Positions 5,201 through 46,514 of a DNA stretch of 64,000 nucleotides are shown here, piece after piece. The notes beneath the pieces were generated by a model, which was given only the letters and a program-made list of their open reading frames with translations, had not been told where the DNA came from and did not search any database. The DNA comes from Trichosphaerium sp. ATCC 40318 (taxonomy: Eukaryota; Protista; Tubulinea). The stretch is from NCBI GenBank assembly GCA_038496445.1, contig JALMLS010000621.1:62001-126000 (forward strand), written 5' to 3'. Positions within the stretch are counted from its first letter, which is position 1; each line of letters begins with the position of its first letter. The translations under genes were made by a program, and so were the position numbers.

Positions 5201-5575
5201 CTAAACGAAGTGTATATATACCTCAACGCATTCTTTCAAGTCCTTGACATAGCGTAGTTCCGTTTCCACAATCTCTTGTACAACCATTCGACGCTGTTTA
5301 CTAACCGCAGGCGTCAAAGGGACCTTAGTCTTAGGTCTTGAAGGAATGTTTAGGTGAGGCGGAGCAGTTTGCTGCGCAATATTCTTGCATTTAGCCAATA
5401 AGTCCATTTTATCACGTGGTACAAATTCTCTAACTGCTGATGAGCCCAAAGAGGCAAATATTGCTCTTCTTTGAGGACCAGACAGTGGTTGACCAGCCAT
5501 GGCTTTTTGTAAGTCACTGGCTATTTTTTTCGATGTAATATTTATGCTATGATATCTCCGCCTTCTTTCTGTCAT
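2289..5575 (-). CDS. Dbl-family RhoGEF (DH-PH) with proline-rich C-terminal tail, multi-exon
   Basis: DH start RRMVVQEIVETELRYVKDL (5300-5221). DH core IQRVTKYPLLIKELLKCTPETHEDYERL (4146-4060). PH-like FLFNDALLLAK and YRTDSIEEAKEWARVL. Splice phases join a small exon (~2985-2926) to the Pro-rich ORF at 2846-2480, and a last exon 2432-2289 ends ...VVDDYL*. Confidence 0.85.
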
Positions 5576-8566: not shown

Positions 8567-9380
8567 TTACTCTACAAAACCGTCTAGCGAGGTGGTTGAG
8601 TCATAGTCAGGAAGCTTGAACGGCTTTTTGCTTTTGGCGTTGAGTCTTGCATAATCGATATGCTTGAACTTTGAAAATTTGAAGTTGGTGTCCCATATGT
8701 TACGAAGTACGTAGTCTTTCCATTTACCATCAATAACACCTTCTCCATTTATACCATGATGATTTATCTCTACAACTTCTTTCCAAGCTGTTTGTCCAAG
8801 AACACCTACATCAGGAAGTCAGAAAAAACAAAACAGATTCTATAAGAAAAAGTTGCTGTAAACGTACCGTGTGGTTGGTCTTTTAGAGCACGTTTATCGC
8901 CGTTGTACTTGGTTCTCATATTCAGATGGCAGGTGCTATGTGATGAAGATGAGAATCTGACAGAGATTCTGTAGTGCTGAGTGATGACTTGAATGCGATC
9001 ATTGTTTGCTTTTGATCTTTTCAGTTTTCCCAAGCTCAGTGTCTTTCTCGCCCCTGATGCAAGTGGTCCACCGTTGAATTCAATACGATGAGACAGATTA
9101 TTACGATCACATGATACAAACAATCTGTCATTTCCAAGGATAATACCGATCTGACCCATGTATGTTTTGTTACTCTTTTCGCGGAGATCAGCGTGTACAA
9201 ATAAAGAGTTTACAGCCACATCGTTGTCGCTAATGATGGCATAGTACATGTCTGGCTTTGCGTGGAAATCTATGAGGTACATCAGCGAGTGTTCAAGAAG
9301 TAAAGCACGAGGTTGATAAAAAGCGTACCGAATTTTTGTCCGTTGAATCCAACAAAGTGAGGGTCACCAGAGATACCTGG
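8567..9380 (-). other. C-terminal VWD-like / root-cap-like domain with GDPH motif (part of gene A)
   Basis: ISGDPHFVGFNGQKF|DFHAKPDMYYAIISDNDVAVNSLFV...TYMGQIGI...HLNM...PHG|VLGQTAW...GEGVIDGKWKDY...DTNFKFSKF. GDPH codons are at 9368-9357. Confidence 0.7.
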
Positions 9381-12300
9381 GTTTACACAACGGAATGTGA
9401 AGCTAAATACACTTTCTCTGTTGGTTGTGGTATTACGCAATGTTATCGTGATGTTGATGAATTGCTCTAAAAACATGTGTGAGCCATTTGCTTTTAATAG
9501 CTGTATTGCTCAAGGCATACCTGTTAATAAAGTGACATTTTGAGACGTGAAGACAGGGCCAGAAGTGTCTGTGAATGAAGATCCATCAAGAGAGAATTCG
9601 AAAGTAACTTCGTCTGTATTTACAGTGTCGACACTGACTTGAATAACACCGTCAGGAACAAGTTGCTTATTCAGTGTGATGCCATCCTAGGAGCACAAAA
9701 GTGAGACCAAAGCGTTTTAACTTTGAAAATTACGTACCTGTAAGATAACAACAATACCACCTGTTGGACTGATGATTTCAGGCATACGTGTCATATCAGG
9801 AACAAGGAAGAACCCAAAATCAATATTATTATCTTCAAAAGGAAGTGCTCCTGTTGTCAATGTAGCACAAGACAATTCAGATAAAATCCCATCACCGAAG
9901 ACGTCAATAGATTGAATAGGACCTCCATCAGAATCCATGGTAGGATCCCCACCTTGACCTGAGAGTGTAGGTTGAAATCCTGTATCACTAGAAAGATATG
10001 AGGTACTGACATCAAAGAATGAAAGGCGTACGTGACATTCACACAAATGGTGTACTCAGTATTTGGGAAGATGCCATGGTCAGGAGTTGTAAAGTTAAAG
10101 TTACCGCCGGCTAGAAAGTTTATATGAGTACTTGGTGGTCATGGTATTATCTAGCAAGCGTACTTGTAGTTGTAGTAACAGCATAGAACATGTTGTTTTC
10201 AAGAACAACGATTTGAATATCAGGAATACCGGTATCTTCAGGGTCTAAACATCAAAAGTAAGAACTTTTCCTTCAATTCAATGGGCTTTTGTACCTTGTA
10301 TACCATCCCCATCGATATCCAAAAAGATTGAGTCTCCAAGTTCTACAGAGTCTGGTAGGAACCCAAAGTCTACAATTGTCGATACATCAGTGTTGTTTGA
10401 TCCCAGCACAACTGTTGCACAAGCAGCAGAAGTTTCTGGAATACCATCTCCATCAACATCGATTAGCCTTTTTCACGGTTAGTACAACACATTTTATGTT
10501 ATTGATTGTTTCCGTACATTGGCAATCCATCAGAGTCTGATCCAACAGGTGCAGGTACATTTGCTGGAGAGGGGAAGAGCAAAGGAGGACTTCCAAAAGG
10601 CACACAAACTTCGTAAGTGGCATCAGGAATCAGTTGGGTAAAGTTGTAGCCACCGTCTGGATCGCTAACTGTTGAGTCCACAAGTGTTCCATTAAGGAAT
10701 AAAAGAATGGTTGCATTGCCAATTGGCGGTTCTGAAGGATCTAGTTGAAAAAAAAGATTAGCGAAGGGTGACTAGGTAGTAAGATAGTCTTGTACCTTGA
10801 ACGCCGTCTCCGTCTGTGTCAAAGAAAAGAAGGTTACCAATAGTAGATGGAACGATGATTACTGCGAAATCAACGTTATCTGTGAAAGATCCATCGAGCG
10901 AAGTGGTTACTTCTCCGCAAGATGCGCGATCGTTTGTGCCATCACCATCAAGGTCAAAATCAAATGATAAGACACCATTTGAATCCATACCAGAGTCAGA
11001 ACCTTGGCCTGGTGGAGGAATCAAAGGAAAGAATGGTCCACCCAATACACCAGAGATATCAGCGCAAACAGTGTAGTTTGTATTACGAGAAAGAGGTGGT
11101 GAAGGGAAACTGTATCTGCCCATAGTATCAGTTGTAGTTGTTGTAACAATGACACCAGAAGTATCAAATATAACGATGAAAACACCACTTGGTCCATCTT
11201 CTCCAGGATCTGCGAAAAGGTGTTAGTCACGTGCGCAGTTTTTAAGAAAGAAGGGTTGACATACCTTGTACGCCATTCCCATTGTCATCTAAGAAAATGC
11301 GATCTCCGACGAGCATAGTTACAGGTGGATGAATGATTCCTATATCCACTGTAGTGCTTAAGTCTAAGCCTGACAATGGCGTTGTGACGGTTGTACAAGC
11401 TGCAGGTGCAGGTGTGCTACCGAAATTGAAAGTTGAAAGAGTGGCATCATAGTCAAGGTTTTCATCAGAGCCGATATTGAATGGAGACACTGTCTCATCT
11501 TGTTCGAGTTCGACGCAAATTATATACTCTGTCAAAGGATCGATGCCATCTGATGACACAAAAGTGTACATGCCATTGGTATCAGTAGTTGTACGACTGA
11601 TTTCAGTTCCATTTGTCAGCGCGATTACAACCAAACGAGATGGTACAGGCAAATCACCAGAATCTTTGTGTTGAAAATTAGAAATGATTGAACTGACTGT
11701 GAAATGGTTGTACCTTGAATGCCATCAGAGTTTATATCAAAAAGAACTGTATCTCCAATTTCAATTGGAGGATCAGTTATAAAACCGAAATCGTTTGTGA
11801 GGTCACTAGCACCTGCTGGGGGAGATACCTGCAATGTTGTTAGTTTTTTGTCAAATAAAACAACAAATAAACAAAAGAGATGTTGTTGTTTTTTTCGTAC
11901 AATGCTGGCGCATGAGGCTGCGTCTTGAATAAAGTCACCATTAAAGTCATAAGAATCAAGAGATCCGTCAGAATCGAGTGTATCATCAGCAATAGCATTT
12001 TGAGTTGTTGGTACAGTGCCATCAGGTTGTTGTACACAAATGATGTATGGTGTTAAAGGCAAGAACATATCCTCGCTGATAAACTGGTAGAAACCGTCTG
12101 GATTAGTTGCTCTTTGTATAACAAGGCTTCTATCTTGGCGCAATAGAACGACTTGCAAAGGAGAAAAGGTTCCATCTCCGAGGTCTAACAAAACTGGTTA
12201 ACTTTTTTGAAATCAAAAAAAAAGGTGTACCTTGAACACCATCGTAGTTCCTGTCACGGAATACTCTGTTACCAATCGAAGATTGAAGAATACCAACATC

Positions 12301-15300
12301 GTTAGAATCATCTATTCTCATAGGACCAGAGACTGGTGTTGTAATGTCAAAGCACGCTGCGTTTTCGTTGATAGAATCTGGAGGTTGTGAGAAATCGAAA
12401 GTATTCAATGATGCATCAAAGTCTATTGTATCGTCGCCGCCTTGGTTCGCTGGTGCTACGGTTTCACTCGGTAGAAGCTCAACACATATTGTGTAAGGTT
12501 GGTTGGGAATGATACCGTCGGTGGAAACAAAACGATAATTGCCGTTTCCATCTGTATCTGTTCTTGATACTTCTGTTCCTTGATAGATAATAACGACTGT
12601 TCGGGAAGAAACAGGTTCGTCTCCACCATCTTGTAGGCCATCATTGTTGATATCGAATGTAACACTGTCTCCAATTTCAATAGGAGGATCTGTCAAGAAT
12701 CCGAAATCTATGGTCCTATCAGATGACCCTCCAGGTGGCGAATCCTAGAAAACACGTGTTACAACCTTACATTGTCAAAGAGTTTAGAAGTGTCGTACAA
12801 TATCAGCACATGATGCACTGTCAGGTGTGCCATCACCATCAAAGTCATAAGCACTAGTTGTACCATCAGAATCAAATGCGTCACCAACAGATGCAACATT
12901 CGCTGGTGATAGGTCGGTTTGAGGGGGTTGTTGAACACATATTGTGTAAGGGCTTGAAGGCAAAAGACCATCTGTTTGTGTGAATGTGTATTCTCCACTT
13001 GCGTCAGTAGTCGTTCTAGCAACTTCACTTCGATCGCGTCTTAGAAGGACAACGATCACGTTTTCGTATCCAACAGGTAATCTAGCTGTTGTAAAGGCTG
13101 TTAGCTTGATACACAAGTACTTTTTGTGGTTGTAAGGCGTACAAGATTGAATTCCATCTGCAAAAAGATCCAAGAAAACCATGTCTCCGACTTCAACAGT
13201 TTGAACTCTTAGACCAATATCAGTTGTATCAACAGTTTGTCCTGGTTGAATGGGGTCCTAACGTAGTATTGTAAATACAAGAATAGATGTAATAAACTTA
13301 CGATAAAGGCACAAGAAGCTTGATTAGGAACACCATCGCCGTCAAAATCAAAAGTACTTAGAAATCCATCAGAATCAATGGTATCATCTCGACCAACATT
13401 TGGGGTTATAGGTAGTTCTGGGCTGATCAATTCGACGCAAATTGTGTATTCAGTATTAGGAAGAATGCCATCGGATGTAGTGACTGTTGCGATACCACCA
13501 CCGGATGTGGTAGTACGTGTAACTTCAGTGCCATCACGGAGAGTGATAACGACTGTTCGTGAAGGTACGACAGAATCTCCAAGATCTTGTGTTCCATCAT
13601 CATTAACATCAAGGAATACAAATGTTTCAATCGTTATTGGTTGAGTCACAAATCCAAAGTCAATGTCATTATCTGTTGCTCCTGTGATAGGAGATGTCTA
13701 AAAATAGAATCATTAACAGAGTCAGGAATATGTTGTAAAGTACGTACAATATCAACACAGGATGCACGTTCAGGTGTTCCACCAGATGGAGATAAGTTAA
13801 TCAATCTTTCCATACCATCAGAATCAATAGCTCCATTGACTTGATCAGGCGTTGTTGGATCATTGCCTGCTGGAATTGGAGTACAAATGATGTAAGACGT
13901 TTGTGGAAGGACTCCATCACTTGTTCCAAACGTATAGATACCACTTGAGTCTGTGGTTATTGTAGCTAAGTGTGTGCCATCCGATTGTAGAATGACAACT
14001 GGATGATTTGCTACGCCTGTATCTCCAGCATCTGTATGCAAAGTTAAATTAAACTCTTTCGTTTCTAGATTTGTACCTTGAGTGCCATCTCTGTTAACAT
14101 CATTAAAGACATAATCACCAATAAACAAAGGTGGAGTGATTATTCCGAAATCTACTGTGAGGTCCGTAGATCCAAGTGATGGTGAGGTCTAAACAAACAT
14201 CTTAGAATGACGAATCACTTTTGAAACGTACTATCACAGCACAGGAAGCATCTTCTTCAATTGAATCTCCATTAAAGTCGAATGAGCTATCTTGACCATC
14301 AAAATCAATGGCGTCGTTGACACCTTGTTGATTTGCTTGTGCTGATATTTCACCCGGTTGAAGAGGAGTACACACAATGTACTGTGTGTTTGGTTGAATG
14401 CCATTTGTTGAGTCGAGAATGTATTCTCCTGCGCTTCCAGTAGTCACACGACCGACTTCTGTACGTGTTGAAGCAAGTGCGATAATTACCAGGCGTGAAT
14501 CTAAAAGCACATCGCCAGGGCCTTGAAAAAAAGTTAATTAAGTGTTTGGCACTTTTTTTGTTTGCAATAGTACTTTGAGTGCCATCGTTATCTGTATCAA
14601 AGAATACTCGATCTCCAATTTCAACAGTTTGAGGTATGAATCCAAAATCAACACTGACATCTGTATTTCCGAGAGCTGGAGAAATCTAAAGGAAAAAAAC
14701 TTAACAACAACAAACAAAAAGTGATTCAAATCAAAACCGTACGATAATTGTGCAAGACGCTGGTTCAGGAACTGAGTCTCCATCAAAGTCAAACAAACTT
14801 AGTGTTCCGTCTGAATCTTGAGAATCGTCTCCTTGGTTATCAGCGGTGACTTGCTCTCCTGGTCTGATTGATGAACAAATTCTGTATGTTGTACTTGGTT
14901 GAACATTGTCTGAAGTCTCGAACATGTAACGACCACTACCGTCTGTTATCTTTCTTGAGACTTCATTGCCAGCAAGATTTAACAAAACTACTGTGGCACC
15001 AATGATAGGCAAATCACCACCGTCTAGTAAAACGTAAGAAATTCTTAAGTTTAAGAAAGTTTGAACAAAGATGTCATTCATACCTTGAATACCGTCTTGG
15101 TTGGTGTCAACAAACACAAAATCTCCAATCATTATTGTTTGAACTGTTGAAAATCCGAAATCAACATCGTTGTTTGTATCACCAAGAGGAGGTGATTGCT
15201 ATTGAATTAAATCAAAAAAATGCTTAAATGAAAAAACAAAGCGTACTATTTGAGCACAAGATGCTGGATCGTTAATATTGTCATTGTTAAAGTCTGCAAT

Positions 15301-18300
15301 GTTATCGTTTTGAGTACCGTCGGAATCTGTTGTCTCATTTGCTCCGAGGTTGGCAACACTTGGTTCTGTACTTGGTGGTATAGCCACACAAATGATGTAC
15401 ATTGTATCTGGCAATACACCGTCTGTTGTTGTAAACGAAAAGTCGCCGGTGCCATCAGTTCTTGTGCTAGCAACGAAAGTACCATCTGGACGCAATAACA
15501 CAACGTCTTGGTTGGTAATGCCGTTTTCGGATGGATCTACAAAGTACAGTCAGGAAAGGAAGGAACTGGATGTTGTGTAGTACCTTGAATACCGTTTGAA
15601 TTATCGTCAGAGAACACGTGATCACCAAGAGTGGTGATACCGACAATTGTACCAAATCCGACTGTATTATCAGTCATACCAGGTCCAGGGGAGATTATGT
15701 CTGTACAAGAAGCTGTTTCAAGTGTACCATCAAGAGGAACGTTGAAATCGAATGTTCTTGAATCTCCATCGGAATCAACAGTGTCAGGACCGGCATCAGG
15801 GTTCACAAGAAGCTCAGTAGGGAGCACTTCGATACAAATGGTGTATGATGTGCCTGGTTGAATACCATCTGTTGAAGTATCGAATGTGGCACCACCTGAA
15901 GAGTCTGTTGTTGTCCTTGAGACAACTGTACCAGAAGAGTCAGTAATTACAACATTTCTGTTCTGGATTGGAGCATCGCTAAGATCAAAAATGTTGTTGT
16001 TGTTATCATCGTTAAATGCAGTAATGACAAGAGTCACAGGTTGGTTTCTAAACCCAAAATCGTAATTTAAGTTAGATACACCAACACTTGGTGATGTCTA
16101 AACAAACACGTGAGTAAAGAGCCAAAACATAAAATAAAGGTACGTACAAAGGCGACGCAAGATCCACGTTCTGTAATGCCATCGGGTATTGCCGACAAGT
16201 CGATGTTACGCAAGACACCGTCAGAGTCAAGATCTTCGGTTGTTTGATTTGGTAATGTTGGATCGTTGCCATCTGGTATTTGAGCACAAATTGTATACGT
16301 TGTCGATGGTAGAACGCCATTTTGAGTACCAAATAGGTACTCTCCCATTGAGTTTGTTGTAACTCGAGTTATTGGCATATCTGCATTGTCAAATAGCACA
16401 ACAGCTATTCCATCAAGAGGCATATCAGAGGCATCTATGTTTGTTTTAGAGGTGAAAAGTGTCTTATAGTGTTACCTTGAATGCCATTGCCGTTTGCGTC
16501 AAAAAACACGAAATCTCCAATAAATTGATCTGGAGTTGCAACACCAAAGTCCACGGTGTTGTCAATAATACCAAGAGCTGGCGTGGTCTACATTGTGTCA
16601 GTTTTTAACAAAACAATATGCGAGTTACTTACAATTGAAGCACATGAAGCTGGATCAAGGCCATCGAGAGGTATGTCAAAGTCGTATGAGCTTGAAACAC
16701 CATTTGAATCCGTTGTAGCGTCACCTTGACCTGTCATCGAAGGCAGTTCACCAACATTGAGTGGAATACAGATTCTGTAGTTTGTGTTTGGAAGAATACC
16801 ATCAAATGTATCAAAACTGTATTGACCCATTGAGTCTGTCACAGTGCGAGATACTTCAGCATTATCGCTTTGTCGTATGATCACGATAGTGCGAGTTCCA
16901 GACGGTAAGTCTCCAGCATCTTAAAAAATATATTAAGCTCTTGAAAACTGTAAAAGGTGTTCGAAGTGTACCTTGAATGCCATTTTCATTGTTGTCAAAG
17001 AAAACAAAATCTCCAACAACAATGGTTTGAGGAATGAATCCGAAATCTACGTCCAAATTTACAGTGCCAAGAGTAGGAGATGTGATGTCGACACAAGATG
17101 CCGGTTCGACAATTGAATCGCCATCAAAATCAAAAATACTGGTTGTTCCATCAGAATCTATGGTATCATCTAATCCTGTATTGATCATAGTTATTTGTTC
17201 TCCGTTTCGTATTGCAGCGCAAATAGTGTAGTCTGTCGAAGGTTGAACATTGTCGAAGGTATCAAACACGTAATTGCCAGTGCCAGTGGTGATCTTGCGA
17301 GCAATTTCAACACCAGAACGTGTCAATAGAACAACTTCAACATTTGAAATAGGATCATCACCACCGTCTATAGCAACATTAACATCACACAGTGTGTGTT
17401 TTGCGTGTACCTTGAATACCGTTCCTGTTGTTGTCAAGGAATAACGAATCACCAACAGACACTGTCAAGATATTGACAAAACCAAAGTCATGAGATGTAT
17501 CAGAAACACCAAGAGCAGGCGATGTCTGCAAGAACTTGTTAGACTACAATGCGAGAGAAGAAAATAAAAAACGTACCAGTGTGATGCATGAAGCATCATC
17601 AAATATCATATCTCCATCAAAATCGAAAAATGAAACGATGAGATTACCATCAGAGTCATTATCATCGTTGGCTCCTTGGTTCATGGGAGCGACTTCTTCT
17701 CCTGATCTGATTGGAGAACACAGAGTGTAAGCTGTGTTTGGAAGCACACCATCAGCAGTTGTGAACGAGTAGATACCCATCGAATCTGTCATTGTACGAA
17801 CAAGTTCAGTACCATCACTTCGCAGTAATACAACTGGATGAGATGTAATAGGCATATCTGATGGCTCTATGCTGACTTAGTAAAACGTGCTAACAGGTCA
17901 CTTTACCTTGAATGCCGTTTCTATTTACATCAAAGAATACAAAGTCTCCGATTGTTACTTCTGGAGTAACAAGACCAAAGTCAAATGTGTCAAGTGTCAT
18001 GCCAGGTGATGGTGATACCTAAAAGCAATGAGTTAGATATTCGGTTGTAAAGTGAAGGTTATCGTACAATGTTAACACATGAAGCTGGATCGTTTGAACC
18101 ATCCATGTTAAAGTCAAAAGTACGAGAATCACCATCTGAATCGAGATCATCTGATCCAATATTCAACATGGCTGAATCCTCCGTGATCATAATTTCAACA
18201 CAAAGAATGTATGGTGTATCAGGTTGTATGCCATCAGATGTGGTGAATGTGGCAACACCTCCACTCAATGTAGTGGTACGTGTGACTTCAGTGACACCAT

Positions 18301-27300: not shown

Positions 27301-30300
27301 CATCAAATATCATATCTCCATCAAAGTCGAAAAATGAAATATTCAAAATACCGTCAGAGTCATTGTCATCACTTGCTCCTTGATTCGGAGGAGCAACTTC
27401 TTCTCCTGATCTGATTGGAGAACATAGAATGTACGCTGTGTTTGGCAGAACACCATCAGCAGTTGTGAATGAGTAGATACCCATCGAATCTGTCATTGTA
27501 CGAACAATCTCAGTTCCATCACTTCGCAGTAATACAACTGGATAAGATGCGATGCCAGGATCAGAAGGGTCTAGAAATCATGTTAAGAAGTCTTCAGAAC
27601 ATAGATATAGGTACCCTTAATTCCGTTCGTGTTCACGTCAGAAAAGACAAGATCGCCAATGACAATCTCAGGTGTCACCACACCAAAGTCAATGGTGTCG
27701 TCAGTAACGCCAGGCATAGGCGATGTCTAAATCAGATTAATAAAATAAGACCCAAAGGTAAAAAGGCGTACAAAATCAACACATGAAGCTGGATCGTTTG
27801 AACCATCCATGTTAAAGTCAAAAGTACGAGAATCACCATCAGAGTCAATAGTGTCGTCAGCACCAACATTTATGGTGGTTGAAGATTCTGTGATCAACAG
27901 TTCGACACACATGATGTATTGTGTCGTTTGGAGAAGACCGTCTGCTGTACCGAACGTTGCCATACCCATACTGTCAGTCATACGTCGTACAATCTCTGTT
28001 CCATCAGGAAGTAGTATGACCACATTCCGTCCAGGAAGAGGAGAATCCATGGCATCTTGAATACCATTTTCATTGACGGCGTCAGAAAACACAGTAGGGG
28101 TTATGGTAATTGTTCGAGATATGAAACCAAAATCATAGTTCATGTTAGACATGCCAGTACTAGGTGAAACCTAAAAAATAAAATAATCAACTAAAGTGCT
28201 TTTAAGTAAGAAAAAAAAATAGGTCTTACAAGGTCAATGCAAGATGCGCGATCTAGCATCATGTTTGGTGGATTCGATAAATCCAATGTACGTATAACAC
28301 CATCAGAGTCGATGGTATCATCAGCACCTTGGTTTGCGATCGAAGGATCTTGGTCAGTTGGAAGTGGAGTGCAAATGGTGTATTGAGTATCTGGTGCTAT
28401 TCCCTCACTTGTATCGAACGTGTAAATACCGTTCATGTCAGTCGTCTTTCTCAATATTTCCATCCCTGCACTAGAGTATAGTATCACGTCGTAATTGGCG
28501 AGAGGCATATCAACAGCATCTTGGTAAAGGAGTTATAAAAGGGAACGTTCAATGCATTTTAAAAAAACTTGAGGCTATCAGTTAAGCTGTACCTTGAATG
28601 CCATTACCGTTCGCATCAAAAAATATAAAGTCTCCAATAAACTGTGTTGGTGTGGTGATACCCAAATCAACATCTGGATTAGTATCACCAAGCGCTGGAC
28701 TCGTCTACAAGGATATAAGAAAAATAATCAAATAAAAAAGAAAAAAAACAAAAAAAGACATACGACTGAAGCACATGAGGCTGGTTCTGCAACAGAGTCA
28801 CCATCAAAATCAAAAGAGCTTGGTACTCCATCAGAATCATCAGTTGGATCCATGCCAACACCACTCGGAGAAGCCAGTTCGCCGACCAACAATGGAACAC
28901 AGATAATATAATTCGTGTTTGGTACAATGTTGTCATCAATTGTATTGAATTCATAAGATCCTGTAATCCTCGAAGTCGTTGTAGATACGAGACTTCTGTC
29001 GTTTGCATTTAAAATCACAACCTGTCTCATCTGTACCCCAACATCTCCAGGATCTACCAAACAGAAATAAGCAAATGCAATTCTTTAAACATAAGACAAA
29101 CAAAATACAAACCTTGAAGGCCGTCTTCGTTGTTATCAAAGAAAACAAAGTCACCAATTGATATTGTTTGCGGAATAAATCCAAAGTCAAGCGATAGATC
29201 AGAACTACCGAGGCTTGGAGTCGTCTATTTAGGATGATTAGAAACTAGTAAATAACCAATTTTCGAAGAAAAAAAAAACATACAACAATAGTGCAAGAGG
29301 CAGGTTCATCGATCATGTCTCCATTGATGTCGAAAGCAGCAAGGACACCATCTGAATCAGCTGTATCATCCATGCCAATATCATTAAATGTGGGTTGCTC
29401 TCCAGCCCTGATTGAAACACAAATGATGTAGTCTGCGTTTGGTTGAATGCCATCGAATGTATTAAAGTCGTAATTGCCATTCACATCTGTGATGGTTCTC
29501 GCAACGACATTATCTGCCATGCTGATTATAACGACATCAGTGCCTTGAATGGCGACATCCATGGCATCTAATCAGAAATTAAACAAATAAAGAAAACCAA
29601 GTTTATCTTCAACGCTACCTTGAAGACCATCTCTATTGCTATCAAGGAACACATAGTTTCCAATTGTAACAATTTCAATATTTACAAATCCAAAATCAGT
29701 TGTGAAGTCGGTGATACCCAAACCAGCTGATATCTAAAGGAATTGGTGTAAGTCACTAAATAATTGTAAAAAACATACAAGGTTGGCACATGATGCATCA
29801 TCAAGTACACCATTGCCATCAAAATCAAAGAAATCCGCTTGAAGAGATCCATCAGAGTCCTGAGCGTCACTTGGACCTTGGTTGGCTTGTGTTGGTTCTT
29901 CACCAAATCGTATCGCAACACAAATGGTGTAAGGAGTGTTTGGCATGACACCATCAGCCAGGTTGAATGAGTACAGTCCATCAATATCTGACACGGTACG
30001 TGCAAGCTCAGTTCCGTCACTACGGAAGATGACGACCGTCTGTCCTTGAATTGGAGTATCGGATCCTGAGAAAAATAAGAAAAGATGTGTATGGTGGAAT
30101 GATGTTTACCTTGCTGGATACCATCAGAATTCACATCAAAGAAGATGAAGTCACCAACATCTTGTCTTGCGATACCAAAGTCAGTTGTATCATGTGTCAT
30201 AGCGGGTCCAGGAGCAGTCTAAATACATCAACAATCAACAAACGTGTGATATAAACGTACAAGTGATGCACAGGAAGCTGGTTCCAGGGTGGCATCTTGA

Positions 30301-33300
30301 GGAACTGTAAAATCATATGATGACAATAATCCATCAGAGTCACGAGCATCGCTCGGTCCTTGATTTGCATTTGATGGAAGTTCACTTGGAAGCAATAAGA
30401 CACATATCTCATACATCTCGTTCGCAATGACACCAGTATCTGTGTCGAATGTGAAAATACCAGAACCGTCAGTATCGGTTCTCGCTACTTCCATCCCACC
30501 AAACAACAATACAACCTGTCTCATCATGACAGGTGTGTCGAACATATCTTGGATTGCAGCACCGTCTTCATCGAAAAATACAAATCCTTCAATGACACTT
30601 GGTTGTTCTACAAATCCGAAATCGTAGTTCAAGTTGTTAACTCCAGTGAATGGCGATGTCTAAAAAAAGAAAAAAAAAAGTAAACAATGAGCTGTTAAAC
30701 AAATGAATACGTACAAAATCAAGACATGAAGCCCTATCAGGCATGCCATCAGGTGGTATGGATACATCAACCATACGTAGAACACCATCGGAATCAATTG
30801 TCCTGTCTGAACCCACTGAAGTTGCTGCTGGGTTGTGTACATCTGGGATCAATGTACAGATAGTGTACAATGTGCTGGGATCCAATCCATCGATTGTACC
30901 AAACATGTAAAATCCAAGGTTGTTCGAATTTGTACTGCTAACACGCACACTCATACTGTCAAATAACACTACAGGATTCATGGCTACAGGTGTATCTCCA
31001 CCATCTAAAAAGTTATAAGCGCCAATTAACCTTGTGTTTGACACGAGGTACCTTGTAGGCCATCTCTGTTTACGTCAGTGAAAATAAAGTCACCAATAAA
31101 TTGATCTGGGGTGATAAGACCAAAATCAATGTCCAAGTTTGTTGTACCAAGAACAGGGCTCGTCTAATTAAAAGTTTAGTGTTAGCGAATGAAGAAAAAA
31201 CAACTTAAAACGCACAAAAGATGCACAACTGGCGTCTTCTTGAACTGTGTCCATGTTAAAATCAAAGGATAATAAACTACCATCAGAATCAAGCATGTCA
31301 TCAGAACCTTGGTTCGCTGTTGTTGGTAGCTCTCCCAATACGATTTGTACACATATGGTATAAAGTGTGCTTGGAGTAATGCCATCAAAAGTGTCAAATG
31401 TAAACAATCCAGATGAGTCTGTTGTTGTTCTAGCAATCTCAAGGCCGCTACCGCCAGTCTCAAATATAACGACAGTGCGAGTTTGAACAGGAACATCACC
31501 GGAATCTAAACGTTCATAAGTGACAAAAACAAAAAAGAACATTCAATCAAAAATTGCATTTTTTAATTGTACCTTGAATGCCATCGTTATTGATGTCAAA
31601 GAAGACTCTATCACCCATCGTGATGGTTTGAGCAACAAATCCAAAATCTATTGTTAGATCGGACTCGCCTAAAAGCGGTGCAGTCTAGGAAGTACATTAG
31701 ATCAACCGAGTATATTATAAAGTGAGCACTTACGACACTAGCGCACGATGCAGGTCTGAGCAACATATCATTATCAAAGTCATATGAGTCAATGAACCCA
31801 TCTGAATCACGCATGTCTGAGGGACCTTGATTGGCAGCGGTGGGTTCTTCATCAGCTCTAATCGTAGTGCAAATCACATATGGCATGCTAGCTTCAACAC
31901 CAGACATTGTGTTAAATAAGTACAGCCCATCCGAGTCTGTTATAGTGCGGCTGACTTCCATTCCACCTTGTATTAACACCACAGTGGCACCAATGATTGG
32001 AACATCAGGCATATCTAAGCATGTTATTTTTGGTTGATAACAATAATTATTTTTCTGTTTACCTTGAATACCGTCTCTGTTGGTATCGAAAAACACATAA
32101 TCACCGATTTCGATGTCTAATGTCAACAAACCGAAATCGATCGTAATATCAGTCTGACCTGGTATTGGTGATCTCTGTGGGTATTGTTAGAACTGAGTGA
32201 AAACTATTAACATACAATTAATGTGCAAGATGCTGGATCACCCATCATGTCTCCATCAAAATCAAACATGGAGTCACTGCCATCAGAGTCGATGGTGGAA
32301 TCGATACCCGCAGTTGTTGAAGTTGAAGCTTCGTTTGTGATGAGTTGTACACAAACAAGATAATCTGTTGCTGGTTCTATTAAAGGTGTTGCAAATGAGT
32401 ATGCACCGGATACATCAGTTGTTGTTCTTGATACTTCAGTGCCATCAGGTAGAAGTACAACAACAGTTCTCATTGAAACAGGAATATCTGTGCCATCTTG
32501 GAGACCGTCTGCGTTCTCATCAAAAAACACGTAATTGCCAATAGCTACTGGCATTATGATAAATCCAAATCCGATTGTTCTATCGTCAATACCCAGAGCA
32601 GGAGACGTCTAAGCAATATGAGTTAACACCATACCAATTTTGATAATTAATAGCACGTACAATACCAACACATGAAGCCGCTTCAGTCATGCCATTAGGA
32701 GGTATTGTAAAGTCAGCCATACTCAACACGCCATCAGAGTCGATGTTATCGTCGACACCAGCGTTTGTCGCAGTTGGCTCATCGAACATGCGTATGCGAA
32801 CACAAATGGTGTATGTAGTGTCAGGCAGTACGCCATCCATTGTATCGAAAGTAAAGATACCCATTGGATCTGAAGACGTGATGGATACTCTCATACCATT
32901 CATGTCCAACAAAACAATATCTGCACCGTTAATTGGTGTGTCACCCATATCTAAATCAAGAAAAATGTGAGAACAATCATTTTAATCACGTGTTTTGGTT
33001 TTTTTGGTATTACCGAATATGCCGTTTCTATTTTCGTCCAAAAACACTTGATCTCCAAGAGCTTGTTGAGGTCGAACAATACCGAAATCAAGTGTGAGGT
33101 CACTGATACCAACAGGAGGAGTAAGAATGTCGCGACAAGATGCGAAATCAAATGTAGAATCTCCATCAAAGTCGTAACTGCCTTGAGTACCATCAGAATC
33201 GATGGATCTATCAGAGCCAACTCTTGTTGGTGATAGAATCTCGCCGACAAGGACAGGTATGCACACAGAGTATTGTGTTAGAGGGGTAAGAGCCACATTA

Positions 33301-36300
33301 TCCAGTAGGTACATGCCTAACATGTTTGTGGTAGATCTTGTTATTTCTGTACTGGATTGATCAATAATAACAACAATACGTCCAGGAACAGGTTCGTCAC
33401 CAGCATCTGTTTTTAAAACCATCTTAGCAAATCACAAATATTTATTTAGGGTATTAAATATTTTAGTTATCCTAGGCCCCTTAGTAGCGTACCTTGTATG
33501 CCATTATTGTTAACATCAAGGAACACAAAATCACCAATGAGAACCGGCGGCGCTAAAGTACATTGTTAGTGCTTTACATTTAAACAAAAGAAGAAATCTT
33601 ACGCGTTGGAGCGAGCGTTGTTGGTGGTTCTGTTGTTGGTGGTGCCGTTGTTGGTGGTTCGGTTGTTGGTGGCTCTGTAGTTGGTGGTGCTGTTGTTGGT
33701 GGTTCCGTTGTTGGCGGTTCTGTTGTTGGTGGTTCTGTAGTTGGTGGTTCCGTTGTTGGTGGTTCCGTTGTTGGTGGTTCCGTTGTTGGCGGCTCTGTGG
33801 TTGGTGGTGCCGTTGTTGGTGGTTCCGTTGTTGGTGGTTCCGTAGTAGGTGGTTCCGTTGTTGGTGGCGCCGTTGTTGGTGGCTCTGTAGTTGGTGGTTC
33901 CGTTGTTGGTGGTTCGGTTGTTGGTGGTGCTGTAGTTGGTGGCAACGTAGGAGCTTCTGTAGTTGGTGGTTCTGTAGTTGGAGGTTCCGTAGTAGGTGGT
34001 TCCGTTGTTGGTGGCGCCGTTGTTGGTGGCTCTGTAGTTGGTGGTTCGGTTGTTGGTGGTTCCGTTGTTGGTGGTGCTGTAGTTGGTGGTTCCGTAGGAG
34101 CTTCTGTTGTTGGTGGCTCTGTAGTTGGTGGTTCCGTTGTTGGAGGTTCTGTCGTTGGAGGTGCCGTAGTTGGTGGCCCTGTAGGAACCATAGTTGTTGG
34201 TGGTTCTGTAGTTGGTGGTTCTGTCGTTGGAGGCTCTGTGGTTGGTGGTTCTGTAGTTGGAGGCTCCGTTGTTGGTGGTTCTGTACTTGGTGGTTCCGTT
34301 GTTGGTGGTGCCGTTGTTGGTGGTCTTGTAGGAACCATAGTTGTTGGTGGCGCTGTAGTTGGTGGCAACGTAGGAGCTTCTGTTGTTGGTGGCTCTGTAG
34401 TTGGTGGTTCCGTTGTAGGTGGTATTGGCTCGTGACATATACCTAGATCAATGTTGTGGTTCCTGTAGCCTGTGGAAGGGATAGAAATAGTGAATACTGC
34501 ATTGGAACCTGAACGCGTATAATCGTTGTCGTGTCTGTCACTTGTTCCAGCACCAGTAGTTGGTATTGTTACTATCATCAAGGGCATCTGTAAGGACTCT
34601 TGTGATAATGGAACAGTAATGGTCCAACTTGTGGCCCCAAAAAGGGGGGAAGAAGCACCAGCGGCGTAATACCTAAATATCAAATTAAGTTTTTTGTTCA
34701 GGTTGTTTTTTTTCTGTATAAAAGCTTACCCTCCGTTCGCCGTTACTACGGTTTCTGGTCTGCTCGAGGGGCCTCTATCTACCATCAGTCCGACATTATC
34801 TATTCCAGGCTCGCTTGGATCTTGAATGCCATCACAGTCAACATCTAGCCAAACATAGTTTCCGATTTGAATTGGTGGAACTAAGCAAAGAGGTTCTATT
34901 TCGCCAAGTCCTGTAGCTTTACCAAAGAATGAAGGATTGTCATCACTATCGTATAGTATATTCGCTAAAACTTTCTGACCAACAGCTGTATTGTGATTTG
35001 TAATACCAGCAGTATTAGCACTCGTTTCACCATTGACAGGATCTATTTGAGTGAAGATCATTTCACCAGTACCTGAAAAACAAAACGCCGTCAATACAAA
35101 CGATAACAACAAAAATTAAAGTTAAAACTTGAGTTCGCTTACCTATCACTGTTGTTACAGTGCCTACAAACGTTTCTTGATGAAAAGCTTGACCTAATAT
35201 AGGGGCATTTATGTATACATCATCAGAAAAGAACTCTGCGTCAACCATTTCGTTATCAAGGCTTGAATCTATGTAAGCAGTATAACCACCGCATGTCGCA
35301 GCTCCTACTGCTCCAGTTTCTTTTGTATAAGTTCCTTAAATTAAAAAAATGAGACACACGTGATTAATTACAAAAAAGGAAGGTGTTTGTACCGGATCCA
35401 TCATTTGAGAAACATATTGCATCACCACCAACATCGCCTGCCATATCAGATCCACGGGCGCCTGTTTGACTGCCGAATCTATCTGAAAACGCTAATATCA
35501 TGTTGTGTTGCTCATCAAATGCAATACCAGATAGGATAGGCTGTGGGTGCGCAACTATAAAAGAATAAACAAAAAAGTAACTGAAAAATGATTACGGCTG
35601 ATGTTCTGTACGTACACTCTGAAAAGCAGTTTGGAAGCATGGAAATATCATCAAGCCATGCATTCCACTGTATCCATTCTTGTTCTATGGTATTTGGACT
35701 GCAGTCGAGTGCAGGTTGGCGATCAAAATCCATCCCTTCTTCTACTATCTATGAGAGAAAACGTTTAGTTTTAGTAGACAGGAAACAAAATAATTAATAA
35801 TTCCTGCGTACATTCGTCCAAGAGAATGCCACCGTACCAAAGTCGTCTGCTGGCGCGCTGTATACGTAATACATCAAGTCAGATCTCATTTGAGTTGATT
35901 GAGCGGTACAAACTATACCAATGTACAGTATGCCCTCGTGGTACCTTAAAAAGCACATGTGAGAAGAAACGATACAAAGTTTTTGTTAAAAACTACGAAA
36001 CTTCGCTTGTAAATAGCTGCGTTAAAAAAAAGCCATAGTAAGTACGCACGTGACACCGAATGGGCGAAAATTTAAGTTTAACTCTCCGCCTGGCGTAGCT
36101 GCGTCTACAACACAGGAAGCTATTCATTGTAAGCATAGCAAATAAATGTTTAAAAATAACAACAAAACAAACAACAATTAAGCCACGTGATAAAAAAGCT
36201 ACCTGGATTGGTGGGTATATCTTCAGATGAAATGTCACTCATTGTAATATCTGCTGGCATTTCCGCCACATCTAAGTAGTTTGTAAATAAACAAGAAGGA

Positions 36301-37666
36301 AGTAAAAATAGGTGGGAAAAAAAAACAACAAGCATACCAATATCAATGCGAACAACAGTTCGAGAAAATAGATTGACAACATAGACGAATTCTTCATCAT
36401 CGCTAATATCCATACCACCGAAACCATGCTTTCCAACAAGAGGAATTGCTAATGCATCAGTGTCCAAATCATTGCTATGCAACTGAGAATTTAGCAAATC
36501 TGTTGCTGGTGACCCGAGAGCTTCCATATCAATTGTTTGCACAATATTACAGCCCATCGAGGCTGTATCGAACAAACGATATATAGTCGATGGCGTTTGT
36601 CCGGTAATATAGCCAACGTGTGCTTTTTGGTAAGAACCTGAAACACATTAATACCAAACTTACCAACTTAGCTCTCTATCTACTATATAAAAAGCCGAAA
36701 GTGTGGACGTACTGGCAAATATTTGAGTAGTCATAGGAGAGTATGCAATACCCCATATAGGGCCTGTTTCAGGTGCGTTGCATACTGTTGTTGGAGCAAC
36801 AGAAGCAGCCGCATTATTAAAAAACGTGGGATCGCTTACAATATTTGTACCGACTGTATTTGCTTTTGTTACTAAAGTAGCTTCCTGAATGGATTGATCA
36901 CCTGTTAAATTATTTGTTACAAAATTGTCACGTGATGAAGGGAAAAAAAAAAAAAAACAAAGAAAATAGTTTCAAAAGCCTATTTATTTGTGAACTCTGA
37001 CGCGATGTTTTCAGAAAACGTACCTCCAACAAAGCAAGTGGATAGGATATCAAACGATAGGCGTACTCCGGGCATTATATCGCCATTACAGAAATCGTGA
37101 ATAATAGATAAAGGAATATCTGCTGCAGTTTCAGGGCCTGTAAATACATACGTCGCAGCAATCACTGCGCCCCCATCAGCATTTATTGAAGAAGATGTCA
37201 CGAATTGTGTCGGGGCATTGACTACCTCTAATCTCAAAGGAATCACTGATATCGGAGTTAGTTGAACTATTTTATAAAAACGTTTGGGTTTTTTTCCATC
37301 TGCTTTAAAAAAACCATGTTAAAAGCAACACTTACTATCAGCTACAGTTAAAGTAAAAGTTCCATCTGCTATTGTTGTATCAGTAGCTACCATCGCATTT
37401 GCGTCGTCATAAGCTTCTATGACAACGTCGATAATTCCTAGTTGAAAGGGTTTAGTGACTTTAAACTGTTTGAATGGTCACATGATTGCCAAACAAAATT
37501 ATTTGTATTAGACCTGACTTGGTTCTTAACAGCGCGTACCAGGTTCTAAAGCATCCCTTCTACCATCGAAATCAAAGTCACGGAATACAGTACCGCTTAT
37601 ATCAGCAACTGAAAGGCTGAATAGCGACAATAAAGCCATCACAAACAGTGAAAAAGTATAACACAT
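8567..37666 (-). CDS. Giant secreted SdrD-B-like repeat protein (adhesin/cell-coat-like), paralog A; ~100 introns, est. ~7,500 aa
   Basis: ATG at 37666: MCYTFSLFVMALLSLFSLSVA (signal peptide), then DISGTVFRDFDFDGRRDALEPG. This is followed by a head domain, a PPTTE linker and ~49 repeats of IGDxVFxDxNxDGxQD...VVL...TTDxxGxYxF...YxIC...NQGxDDxxDSDG...FDFDGD...ASC...DFGF split by GT-AG introns. The C-terminus has GDPHFVGFNGQKFDF, and the last exon ends ...SLDGFVE* (stop 8569-8567). Confidence 0.88.
9820..33552 (-). repeat. Tandem array of ~49 SdrD-B-like domains (~480 bp each incl. introns), with 5-unit higher-order period (~2.4 kb)
   Basis: Manual count of recurring exon units. Near-identical units recur every ~2.4 kb, e.g. 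ORFs 18059-18445, 20392-20841, 22752-23264 and 16588-16884, 19020-19283, 21404-21670. Confidence 0.85.
33604..34433 (-). repeat. Coding 15-bp minisatellite, (PPTTE/PPTTA)n mucin-like linker, ~55 units (gene A)
   Basis: ORF 33580-34683 translation; ggtggttc(t/c)gt(a/t)gtt units on the + strand. Confidence 0.9.
34870..37100 (-). other. N-terminal head domain of gene A (bacterial-type, probable beta-propeller-like)
   Basis: Spliced motifs: GPIWGIAYS, VGKHGFGGMDISDDEEFVYVVNLFSR, RPFG...YHEGILYIGIVCTA, WNAW, HPQPILSGIAFD...LAFSDRFG, HQETFVG, FGKATGLGEIEPLC, leading into IQIGNYVWLDVDCDGIQDPSEPG. Confidence 0.65.
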
Positions 37667-46361: not shown

Positions 46362-46514
46362 ACTGCATCAAGGCGACACGAGCTCTTGAAACACCATTGC
46401 GCGTTGACTTTGAATTACATTACATTTTATTAAAATAAAGAAAAGATTCTTGTTTTCTTCTAAACATTCCTTTTGGGTTTGATTTCATTTGCTTGTTTTT
46501 TTTTCAGTTTTCGT

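What the first reader, a model, noticed from the sequence alone, without database searches (positions are those of the whole stretch)
8567..37666. Giant intron-rich eukaryotic protein built from bacterial SdrD-B adhesin modules
Seen: a 29-kb gene with ~100 spliceosomal introns encoding signal peptide + SdrD-B-like domain + head + SdrD-B-like domain + mucin linker + ~49 SdrD-B-like repeats + VWD-like end. It has no obvious TM helix or LPXTG. Established: IGDxVxxDxNxDGxQD...TTDxxGxYxF...DSDG...DFG is the Ca-binding B-repeat of Staphylococcus SdrD-type surface proteins. As I recall, the head motifs (WGxAY, GKxGxGxxDIS, PQPILxxIEFD, HQET, FGKAxGLG) occur in bacterial 'SdrD B-like domain' proteins. 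Inference: a bacterial adhesin was acquired horizontally, gained introns, amplified massively and fused to eukaryotic mucin/VWD modules, giving a long, rigid, acidic filament for a cell coat, test or substrate/prey adhesion.
Basis: partly seen in the sequence, partly recalled or inferred. Interest (0 to 1): 0.92.

Follow-up and report, generated by a model that had tools for sequence, protein, structure and literature searches.

The report
Amoeba giant protein from bacterial adhesin parts
A single-celled, amoeba-like eukaryote carries a transcribed, intron-rich gene for a secreted protein of about 7,900 residues whose head and 49-domain stalk are of bacterial surface-adhesin type, joined to a mucin-like linker and a self-cleaving-type (GDPH) end domain, so bacterial adhesin parts have apparently been rebuilt into a eukaryotic surface filament.

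Summary
On the minus strand, from the ATG at 37666 to the stop at 8567, lies one gene of about 98 exons. Its GT-AG introns have a median length of 51 nt, and the product is about 7,898 aa. The parts in order are:
- a signal peptide
- a B-type sandwich domain
- a ~500-aa head
- an SdrD_B domain
- a 277-aa Pro/Thr linker
- exactly 49 tandem SdrD_B repeats, arranged in a 5-domain super-repeat
- a small beta-rich domain
- a GDPH tail

There is no TM segment, no LPXTG and no hydrophobic C-terminus. Net charge is about -950. RNA-derived contigs confirm 4 of the head introns.

The first ~760 aa align collinearly (27-30% identity, E to 1e-79) with a large module family. Every named member is bacterial (Bacteroidota, Chloroflexota and others). 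No eukaryotic relative turned up. The head of a bacterial homologue folds as a beta-propeller. None of 77 bacterial relatives matches the tail.

The tree does not show nesting in a bacterial clade and the donor is unresolved. VWD membership of the tail rests on the motif plus an embedding hit. Function is inferred.

A paralogue in the same window has a 40-66% identical head and a ~95% identical stalk. The scan had already found this family on other DNA of this genome (s1-378512, s1-397353, s1-406605).

The parts
8567..37666 (-). Whole gene: ~98 exons, ~7,898 codons, 97-98 GT-AG introns (median 51 nt)
   Evidence: splicing confirmed at 4 introns by RNA-derived contigs; indels against the paralogue fall only in predicted introns
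37604..37666 (-). Signal peptide (aa 1-21), the only strongly hydrophobic N-terminal stretch
   Evidence: hydropathy scan; inspection
37088..37603 (-). N-terminal B-type / CarboxypepD_reg-like beta-sandwich (aa 22-129, exons 1-3)
   Evidence: aligns with the first domain of the bacterial module; bacterial counterparts hit CarboxypepD_reg/SdrD_B; weak hit to the repeat HMM
34873..37087 (-). Head (aa 130-628, ~10 exons): predicted beta-propeller by homology
   Evidence: exon 5 phmmer gave 69 hits and all named ones are bacterial; collinear blastp E to 1e-79; AF2 model of bacterial homologue P0008:1-720 has pLDDT 86.5 and Foldseek hits Kelch, TolB, YVTN, BtuG and YWTD propellers
34426..34872 (-). 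SdrD_B domain directly after the head (aa 629-758)
   Evidence: Pfam PF17210 E 1.5e-08 and 2.5e-08; repeat HMM 25 bits
33545..34425 (-). Pro/Thr-rich mucin-like linker (aa 759-1035; 15-nt period, ~55 copies)
   Evidence: only a sub-threshold Extensin_1 match
9798..33544 (-). 49 tandem SdrD_B repeats (~132-134 aa each; two invariant Cys; D 13%, K 0.1%), with a 5-domain (~2.4 kb, 8-exon) super-repeat in the middle
   Evidence: AF2 of one repeat best matches SdrD B1 and UafA B domains
9390..9797 (-). Linker plus small beta-rich domain before the tail (aa 7565-7665); no family assigned
8570..9389 (-). C-terminal GDPH / VWD-like domain (aa 7666-7898); GDPH at 9357-9368; Cys at aa 7666, 7739, 7799; hydrophilic C-terminus
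   Evidence: Atlas nearest clusters VWD 0.95, diatom VWFD, Root_cap, ITI_HC_C, RGM; no match in 77 bacterial relatives
53970..64000 (+). Paralogous gene in divergent orientation, running off the window: same architecture, head 40-66% aa identical, stalk exons 94.9% nt identical

Best explanation
This is a real, expressed nuclear gene of an amoeba-like protist. It encodes a secreted, unanchored-looking giant filament built on the plan of a bacterial fibrillar adhesin.

Shown:
- a signal peptide
- an N-terminal module (B-type sandwich, ~500-aa head, SdrD_B domain) that is homologous end to end to a module common in surface proteins of Bacteroidota, Chloroflexota and other bacteria
- a Pro/Thr linker
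- 49 tandem SdrD_B domains
- a C-terminal domain with a GDPH motif that the bacterial relatives lack

Inferred history:
- A bacterial gene or gene fragment carrying the head module and at least one B domain entered the lineage.
- It was fully ameliorated (40% GC, ~98 introns).
- It was joined to a mucin-like linker and to a GDPH/VWD-type domain that this genome reportedly also uses in other surface proteins.
- Its B domain acquired a conserved Cys pair and an extra acidic loop.
- It was then amplified as a 5-domain, intron-containing unit.

Inferred mechanism:
- The protein is exported. The acidic B domains keep the DxNxDGxQD and DSDG loops of Ca-binding staphylococcal B repeats, so they probably bind Ca2+ and form a long, mechanically strong rod. 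At about 4 nm per domain the rod would be of the order of 0.2 micrometres.
- The O-glycosylatable Pro/Thr stretch acts as a flexible neck.
- The beta-propeller at the distal N-terminal tip binds a ligand on substrate, prey or other cells.
- The GDPH domain cuts itself between Asp and Pro, as VWD domains do. It would hold or couple the rod to the cell coat through Cys7666 paired with a downstream Cys, or through the activated Asp.

The neighbouring paralogue has a very different head on a nearly identical stalk. This suggests a family of such filaments with different specificities.
For: - Gene structure and splicing.
- SdrD_B identity: (17/17 repeats). Best PDB folds are 10ps and 4jdz (SdrD) and 3irp (UafA), TM 0.57-0.60.
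- Repeat count and super-repeat: 49 repeats; lag-5 identity reaches 100%, and at lag 5 mean identity is 60% against ~42% at other lags.
- Ca-loop motifs: strict DxNxDGxQD in 36/49 repeats and DSDG-like in 49/49; two Cys in 49/49.
- Head module homology.
- Named relatives are all bacterial.
- Propeller fold of the homologue.
- Tail: absent from the bacterial relatives, whose C-termini are DUF11, GEVED, SdrD_B or T9SS. The nearest Atlas clusters of the tail are eukaryotic VWD, VWFD and Root_cap.
- Secretion and anchoring: no TM, LPxTG or GPI-like end; net charge ~-950.
- Purifying selection on the stalk between paralogues: dN/dS 0.28 over 1,716 codons.
- Literature: staphylococcal B domains are Ca-stabilised, extremely mechanostable folds (PMC6232131). 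GDPH in VWD domains is cleaved autocatalytically and the fragments are held by disulfides (PMC10880436, PMC8267560).
Against: - The head tree (quick search only) places the two amoeba sequences on one long branch (1.68) outside the sampled bacterial sequences. Nesting is not shown and the donor is unknown.
- Identity to bacteria is only 27-30%, so the event is old or the gene evolves fast.
- PF17210 is reported in at least one other protist group, the thraustochytrids (PMC8917795). The B domain as such is therefore not unique to this eukaryote.
- The tail did not reach significance in Pfam, PDB or word-based searches when tested exon by exon.
- RNA support covers only four head introns from short contigs of a run whose RNA status is a guess.
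- The head fold was modelled on a bacterial homologue, not on the amoeba protein.
- There is no localisation, Ca-binding, cleavage or binding data.
Confidence: 0.68

Rival explanations
1. Same gene and same origin, but the product is a structural matrix, cyst-wall or coat scaffold. It would be a Ca2+-crosslinked acidic polymer, not a ligand-specific adhesin, and the propeller would serve self-assembly.
For: Extreme acidity and Ca-loop motifs. There is no membrane anchor. GDPH/VWD domains and odd Cys counts (three in the tail) are typical of polymerising mucins. Several paralogues exist.
Against: The tip-head plus stalk polarity, and the strong divergence of heads on near-identical stalks, fit diversified ligand recognition better than a uniform scaffold.
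Confidence: 0.2
2. No bacteria-to-eukaryote transfer. The module would be ancient in eukaryotes and lost elsewhere, or it moved from a eukaryote into bacteria.
For: The amoeba heads branch outside the sampled bacterial sequences on a long branch. Identity is low. SdrD_B occurs in some other protists (PMC8917795).
Against: The module has hundreds of members in at least five bacterial phyla, often in tandem copies within one protein. No eukaryotic member appeared among 69 phmmer hits of 1.84 billion representatives or 228 profile hits.
Confidence: 0.07
3. Artefact: bacterial contamination, misassembly of a repeat, or a dead gene.
For: Long near-identical repeats are hard to assemble. The repeat number could be wrong by whole 5-domain units.
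Against: The gene has ~98 spliceosomal introns, four of them seen removed in RNA contigs. Flanking genes are ordinary eukaryotic ones. GC equals the surroundings. The reading frame is intact over 7,898 codons. dN/dS against the paralogue is 0.28.
Confidence: 0.03

Closest known systems
Bacterial 'SdrD B-like domain-containing' surface proteins with a B-domain / beta-propeller / SdrD_B module (e.g. WP_185155628.1 Rudanella paleaurantiibacter; MFN8488963.1 Caldilineaceae; relatives in Spirosoma, Saprospiraceae, Nitratifractor, Blastocatellales)
   Same: The whole first ~740 aa are collinear and share the consensus motifs TWGxAY, VGKxGLGDxDISDD..YVVNL, YPQPxLSDIEFD and FGKANGLGD. An SdrD_B domain follows.
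   Different: Identity is 27-30%. The bacterial proteins have no introns and often carry 2-5 copies of the module. Those examined end in DUF11, GEVED, SdrD_B or T9SS sorting domains, and 77 relatives have nothing like the GDPH tail. I saw no Pro/Thr mucin linker in them, though this was not tested separately. Their B domains mostly lack Cys.
Staphylococcus SdrD / SdrG B repeats (PDB 4JDZ, 10PS; PMC6232131)
   Same: Pfam family PF17210, best structural match, EF-hand-like acidic loops, and tandem arrangement as a stalk.
   Different: There is no A region (N2N3), no Ser-Asp repeat region and no LPXTG. The gene has 49 domains rather than 2-5. Each domain has a conserved Cys pair and an extra FDFDGD loop. 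No significant sequence hit to any PDB chain.
Bacterial fibrillar adhesins as a class (tip adhesive domain, repeated stalk, anchor; bioRxiv 10.1101/2021.12.07.471604)
   Same: N-terminal putative binding domain, long stalk of one repeated beta-sandwich family, and a distinct C-terminal end module.
   Different: It is encoded by an intron-rich eukaryotic gene. The anchor is replaced by a GDPH/VWD-like domain, and a mucin-like neck is inserted.
VWD / GDPH self-cleaving domains (FCGBP, MUC2, SUSD2, RGM; ITIH and plant Root_cap relatives; PMC10880436, PMC8267560)
   Same: A GDPH motif preceded by a Cys seven residues upstream, with further Cys downstream. The nearest Atlas clusters are VWD, VWFD, Root_cap, ITI_HC_C and RGM.
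   Different: No significant HMM or sequence match was obtained on single exons. No C8/TIL companions were seen. Cleavage is untested.
Paralogues in the same genome (scan notes s1-378512, s1-397353, s1-406605)
   Same: Same stalk domain and GDPH end. The in-window paralogue has the same full architecture as far as it is visible.
   Different: Different head sequence (40-66% aa identity) and a different repeat number (62 reported for s1-378512, which I did not check).

Membership tests
SdrD_B domain family (Pfam PF17210) | Match to the Pfam HMM above the gathering score (29.7 bits) | tested here: met
   66.9, 54.0, 44.4 and 35.3 bits on ORF pieces. 17 of 17 single-exon repeats match at E <= 0.001, best 6.5e-18.
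SdrD_B domain family (Pfam PF17210) | Prealbumin/CnaB-like beta-sandwich fold closest to solved SdrD B domains | tested here: met
   AF2 model of one repeat has pLDDT 77.6. Top Foldseek PDB hits are 10ps, 4jdz (SdrD) and 3irp (UafA), with TM 0.57-0.60, rmsd 2.3-4.2 and prob 1.00, but E is only ~3e-3.
SdrD_B domain family (Pfam PF17210) | EF-hand-like acidic Ca2+-binding loops | tested here: inconclusive
   Motif level only: strict DxNxDGxQD in 36/49 repeats and DSDG-like in 49/49. Actual Ca2+ binding is not testable here.
Staphylococcal Sdr / MSCRAMM adhesins | LPXTG cell-wall sorting signal | tested here: not met
   No LP.[TSA]G anywhere in the model and a hydrophilic C-terminus.
Staphylococcal Sdr / MSCRAMM adhesins | N2N3 (dock-lock-latch) A region as the ligand-binding head | tested here: not met
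   The head is homologous to a bacterial module that models as a beta-propeller.
Bacterial B-domain / propeller / SdrD_B module family (unnamed) | Collinear ~730-aa module with the conserved motif set | tested here: met
   blastp E 1e-58 to 1e-79 over aa ~20-760 against many members. Motifs are in the alignment consensus. Exon 5 alone gives E 4e-18.
Bacterial B-domain / propeller / SdrD_B module family (unnamed) | Bacterial-type C-terminal end (T9SS sorting domain, DUF11, GEVED) | tested here: not met
   The amoeba tail has no match in 77 relatives. The relatives end in DUF11, GEVED, SdrD_B or PF18962.
VWD / GDPH (DPH, Root_cap, ITIH-C) superfamily | GDPH motif at the start of the domain with a preceding Cys | tested here: met
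   Cys 7666, then GDPH at aa 7673-7676 (window 9357-9368).
VWD / GDPH (DPH, Root_cap, ITIH-C) superfamily | Significant match to a family HMM or solved structure | tested here: inconclusive
   Single exons gave no Pfam hit, no PDB sequence hit and no word-based homologue. The Atlas embedding gave VWD at 0.95 with 164 shared features, which is borderline. The spliced tail has no reference and was not typed in, so the proper HMM test was left out.
VWD / GDPH (DPH, Root_cap, ITIH-C) superfamily | Autocatalytic Asp-Pro cleavage | not testable with these tools
   Needs expression of the tail followed by mass spectrometry or a gel.
Gel-forming mucins | PTS domain plus VWD-C8-TIL assemblies and a CK/CTCK domain | tested here: not met
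   A Pro/Thr domain is present. No C8, TIL or CK was detected in any exon scanned, and the tail has only three Cys.

The most novel reading that the evidence does not exclude
This protist may have turned a captured bacterial adhesin into a modular eukaryotic family of 'fibrillar adhesins'. In this reading, interchangeable and fast-diverging beta-propeller heads sit on a stalk kept nearly identical between genes by recombination or conversion. The filament would be fixed to the cell coat by a self-cleaving GDPH domain that takes the place of the bacterial anchor. The family would serve to recognise or capture prey or substrate. That would be a eukaryotic reinvention of sortase/T9SS-type surface display using an autoproteolytic anchor.
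Probability: 0.3. Interest if true: 0.8.

Novelty: new variant of a known kind. Interest (0 to 1): 0.62.

Why it matters
Bacterial genes in amoebae are common. A complete adhesin plan (tip domain plus stalk) that has been intronised, amplified to 49 domains and grafted onto eukaryotic secretory modules is not described in the literature I could search.

If the reading holds, the gene gives three things:
- A natural experiment on how a prokaryotic surface-display architecture is re-anchored in a cell that has no cell wall, sortase or T9SS.
- A candidate for one of the longest Ca-stabilised protein rods in a eukaryote.
- A testable case of head diversification on a concertedly evolving stalk.

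It also puts on record a large bacterial module family (B domain, propeller, B domain) that has no Pfam model for its head.

Tried and rejected
- Pfam on single head and tail exons gave nothing except the SdrD_B start (one search failed on frame).
- PDB sequence searches with the tail exon and with a repeat gave no hits.
- The search for homologous proteins with the tail exon and with one repeat gave no hits. Its length window of 0.55-1.75x excludes giant proteins, so these blanks mean little.
- The Atlas search on the last exon had low recognition and was uninformative.
- P0049 looked like a possible eukaryotic fragment. Its contig L001 is 54% GC with 26% identity and is most likely bacterial.
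- I tested whether the stalk derives from the head-adjacent B domain. Bacterial head-adjacent domains score only slightly higher against the stalk HMM (median 40 vs 35 bits, p 0.01), which is not decisive.
- The tree to test nesting shows only a long amoeba branch. The careful search did not finish, so the quick tree was used. With only two groups and no outgroup, nesting cannot be decided.
- My gene finder over-spliced at a lower intron penalty. I kept the penalty-6 model and corrected exon 3 from RNA and the tail by reading-frame continuity.
- An earlier scan note says exons are homogenised while introns are unrelated. For 27206-33792 this does not hold as stated: introns are 84% identical and dS (0.10) is compatible with ordinary divergence under purifying selection.
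- The Rfam scan of the window found nothing.
Pfam, structure prediction and full-length searches on the amoeba's own spliced sequence were therefore left out.

Full report
**The gene.** Six-frame ORFs between 8 and 38 kb show dozens of minus-strand pieces with the same acidic repeat. The sequence shows an ATG at 37666 followed by a hydrophobic leader. It also shows short GT...AG interruptions and a stop ending at 8567.

I wrote a small splice-aware dynamic-programming gene finder that uses codon log-odds, trained donor and acceptor matrices and an intron-length prior. After two corrections the model has 98 exons, 97 introns (40-122 nt, median 51; donors mostly GTACG or GTAAG) and 7,898 codons with no internal stop. 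One further in-frame intron is still unspliced in exon 44.

Two independent checks support the model:
- Contigs of public run X1 skip exactly four of my head introns on the minus strand: 37437-37538, 37246-37335, 35943-36047 and 35334-35391. One of these joints corrected my exon 3. The run's RNA status is only a guess in the record, but contigs lacking GT-AG introns can only come from spliced RNA.
- In a 6.6-kb alignment with the paralogue in the same window, all 171 gap columns lie in predicted introns and none in exons. Exons are 94.9% identical and introns 83.8%.

Only the head was laid on reads, so a transcript over the whole locus is not shown.

**Architecture.**
- Residues 1-21 are the only strongly hydrophobic N-terminal stretch. 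There is no other TM-like segment, no LPxTG, and the C-terminus is hydrophilic.
- Pfam SdrD_B (PF17210) is hit well above threshold by repeat pieces and by 17 of 17 single-exon repeats.
- An HMM built from the repeats finds exactly 49 tandem copies at aa 1036-7564. It also finds one copy after the head (629-758) and a weak N-terminal one.
- Every repeat has exactly two Cys. Asp makes up 13% and Lys 0.1% of the repeats. The whole protein has a net charge of about -950.
- The strict loop DxNxDGxQD is present in 36 of 49 repeats and a DSDG-like loop in 49 of 49.
- An AlphaFold model of one repeat (pLDDT 77.6) finds SdrD B1 (10ps, 4jdz) and UafA (3irp) as best PDB folds at TM 0.57-0.60, although the Foldseek E-values are weak.
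- Between head and stalk lies a 277-aa stretch of 104 Pro and 104 Thr with a 15-nt period.
- After the last repeat come about 100 aa of unassigned beta-rich sequence. Then comes a ~230-aa tail that starts with Cys-x6-GDPH (aa 7673-7676, window 9357-9368) and has two more Cys.

**Super-repeat.** Repeat identity is about 42% at most lags but 60% at lag 5, and individual lag-5 pairs reach 100%. The DNA period is 2.38-2.46 kb at 80-87% identity. Each 5-domain unit comprises the same 8 exons (396; 112+290; 115+396; 287; 112+290 nt). The introns were therefore already in place when the unit was amplified. Amplification happened in the eukaryotic genome after intron gain.

**Head.**
- *Searches.* Exon 5 (99 aa) was scored against all 1.84 billion representative proteins. 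It gave 69 hits at E <= 0.001, the best at 36% identity and E 4e-18, nearly all large proteins. I looked up 30 of them. Every named one is bacterial: Caldilineaceae and Caldilinea, 'Chloroflexi bacterium TSY', Rudanella, Bacteroidia and Bacteroidota.
- *Collinearity.* In the sandbox, my spliced first 800 aa align collinearly over aa ~20-760 with these proteins at 27-30% identity and E down to 1e-79. Many bacterial proteins carry the ~730-aa module two to five times.
- *Motifs.* The consensus of 33 bacterial modules contains TWGxAY, VGKxGLGDxDISDD..YVVNL, YPQPxLSDIEFD and FGKANGLGD.
- *Profile search.* A profile search found 228 more members at E <= 1e-10. The named ones are from Spirosoma, Runella, Saprospiraceae, Sphingobacteriales, Arundinibacter, Caldilineaceae, Nitratifractor, Blastocatellales, Acidobacteriota and a gammaproteobacterium. 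Several carry DUF11, GEVED or the T9SS sorting domain PF18962, and none is eukaryotic.
- *Fold.* An AlphaFold model of the Rudanella module (pLDDT 86.5, pTM 0.89) is a beta-propeller flanked by B-type sandwiches. Foldseek finds Kelch, TolB, YVTN, BtuG/XusB, nidogen and LRP/ROS1 propellers, plus SdrD for the flanks. The fold of the amoeba head is inferred from this homologue.

**Origin.** The distribution argues for transfer from bacteria: hundreds of members in at least five bacterial phyla against one protist lineage. The tree does not add to this. The two amoeba heads form one long branch (1.68 substitutions per site) attached to an unresolved bacterial bush. With only two groups there is no way to show nesting, and the careful search did not finish. 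The donor is unknown and the event is not recent. GC equals the flanks.

SdrD_B as a domain is not unique to this eukaryote, because a thraustochytrid transcriptome paper lists many PF17210 proteins (PMC8917795). I found no paper describing a eukaryotic protein of this kind.

The bacterial B domains of this family match the amoeba stalk HMM at up to 68 bits. Most lack Cys, and the top hits lack the FDFDGD...ASC segment. The stalk domain is thus a derived, disulfide-bearing version.

**Tail.**
- None of 77 bacterial relatives matches it, and their ends are DUF11, GEVED, SdrD_B or T9SS domains. The gene is therefore a chimera.
- The Atlas embedding of the main tail exon puts it nearest to VWD (0.95), diatom VWFD, Root_cap, ITI_HC_C and RGM clusters, which are wholly or predominantly eukaryotic.
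- Exon-by-exon Pfam, PDB and word searches were negative. The spliced tail could not be submitted because it has no reference.
- Membership in the VWD/DPH superfamily is therefore a well-motivated lead, not a result.
- An earlier agent reached a 'DPH/Root-cap' reading on a paralogue (s1-378512). I did not reproduce that.
- From the literature, GDPH in VWD domains is cleaved between Asp and Pro and the fragments are held by disulfides across the cut (PMC10880436, PMC8267560). Here Cys7666 lies upstream and Cys7739 and Cys7799 downstream of the putative cut, which would allow the same arrangement and leave one Cys free.

**Paralogue.** A second gene starts near 53970 on the plus strand, in divergent orientation, and runs off the window. 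From inside the Pro/Thr linker onward (33792 vs 57434), the two genes are one continuous 6.6-kb alignment at 91% identity. dS is 0.10 and dN/dS 0.28 over 1,716 codons. The heads are only 40-66% identical in protein and barely alignable in DNA. Either the stalks were recently exchanged between older genes, or the heads diverge much faster. Both readings fit a family with different tip specificities.

**Mechanism (inferred).**
- The protein is exported.
- The B domains bind Ca2+ and form a stiff, force-resistant rod. Staphylococcal B domains are the most mechanostable folds known, and calcium stabilises them (PMC6232131).
- The Pro/Thr neck is O-glycosylated and flexible.
- The propeller at the far N-terminal end binds a ligand.
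- The GDPH domain at the other end self-cleaves and mediates attachment or polymerisation.

This is the plan of a bacterial fibrillar adhesin with the wall anchor replaced.

A purely structural role (coat, cyst wall or matrix) is the main rival. According to unchecked scan notes, the organism is an amoeba with insertional mitochondrial RNA editing like the heterolobosean BB2. I did not verify the taxon.

**Verdict.** It is corrected in its details: the parts are not Staphylococcus-like, the head is a propeller, nesting is not shown, and the tail family and the function are unproven. The scan had already met this gene family on other pieces of the genome. What this window adds is the complete N-terminal module with its bacterial family, and the head/stalk contrast between neighbouring paralogues.

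Noticed in passing
window 35860-36931, + strand: Two small cDNA-type runs (X2, X3) carry the SMART template-switch oligo directly before 35860 and 36152. They give plus-strand contigs antisense to the head exons. One contig is spliced at plus-strand GT..AG introns 36038-36098 and 36629-36670. This is an antisense, probably non-coding transcript over exons 4-8 of the giant gene.
   Followed up: partly
window 33792/57434 (junction inside the Pro/Thr linkers of the two paralogues): There is a sharp boundary. Upstream, the heads show only 69-72% DNA identity in patches. Downstream, the stalks align as one 6.6-kb block at 91% identity including introns. This suggests recombination or gene conversion limited to the stalk.
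   Followed up: partly
whole window; gene 8567-37666: CACGTG occurs 45 times against 8.7 expected from base composition, while GTGCAC occurs 0 times against 8.7 expected. Inside the gene, 10 of 11 copies lie in the 5.4 kb of introns and only 1 in the 23.7 kb of exons. The excess was already noted elsewhere in this genome (s1-383652).
   Followed up: partly
bacterial proteins P0001, P0053, P0056, P0011 and others: The ~730-aa B-domain/propeller/B-domain module is repeated in tandem up to five times within single bacterial proteins. Its ~500-aa head has no Pfam model.
   Followed up: partly
window 44737-46361 (+), 46473-48409, 18-581 (+), 5201-5575 (-): The flanking genes look like ordinary eukaryotic cytoskeleton and signalling genes: a SCAR/WAVE-like protein with a poly-Pro and WH2-like end, a Rac-type GTPase near an MRT4-like gene, a protein kinase fragment and a DH/RhoGEF-like exon. 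They were read from ORF translations only.
   Followed up: no
window 10797-12744 (last six stalk repeats) and 9738-10740: The C-terminal repeats (44-49) are the most divergent, at 30-35% identity to the rest. Some have DYDA or DFDA in place of DSDG. The proximal end of the rod is therefore older or under different constraint than the amplified middle.
   Followed up: no
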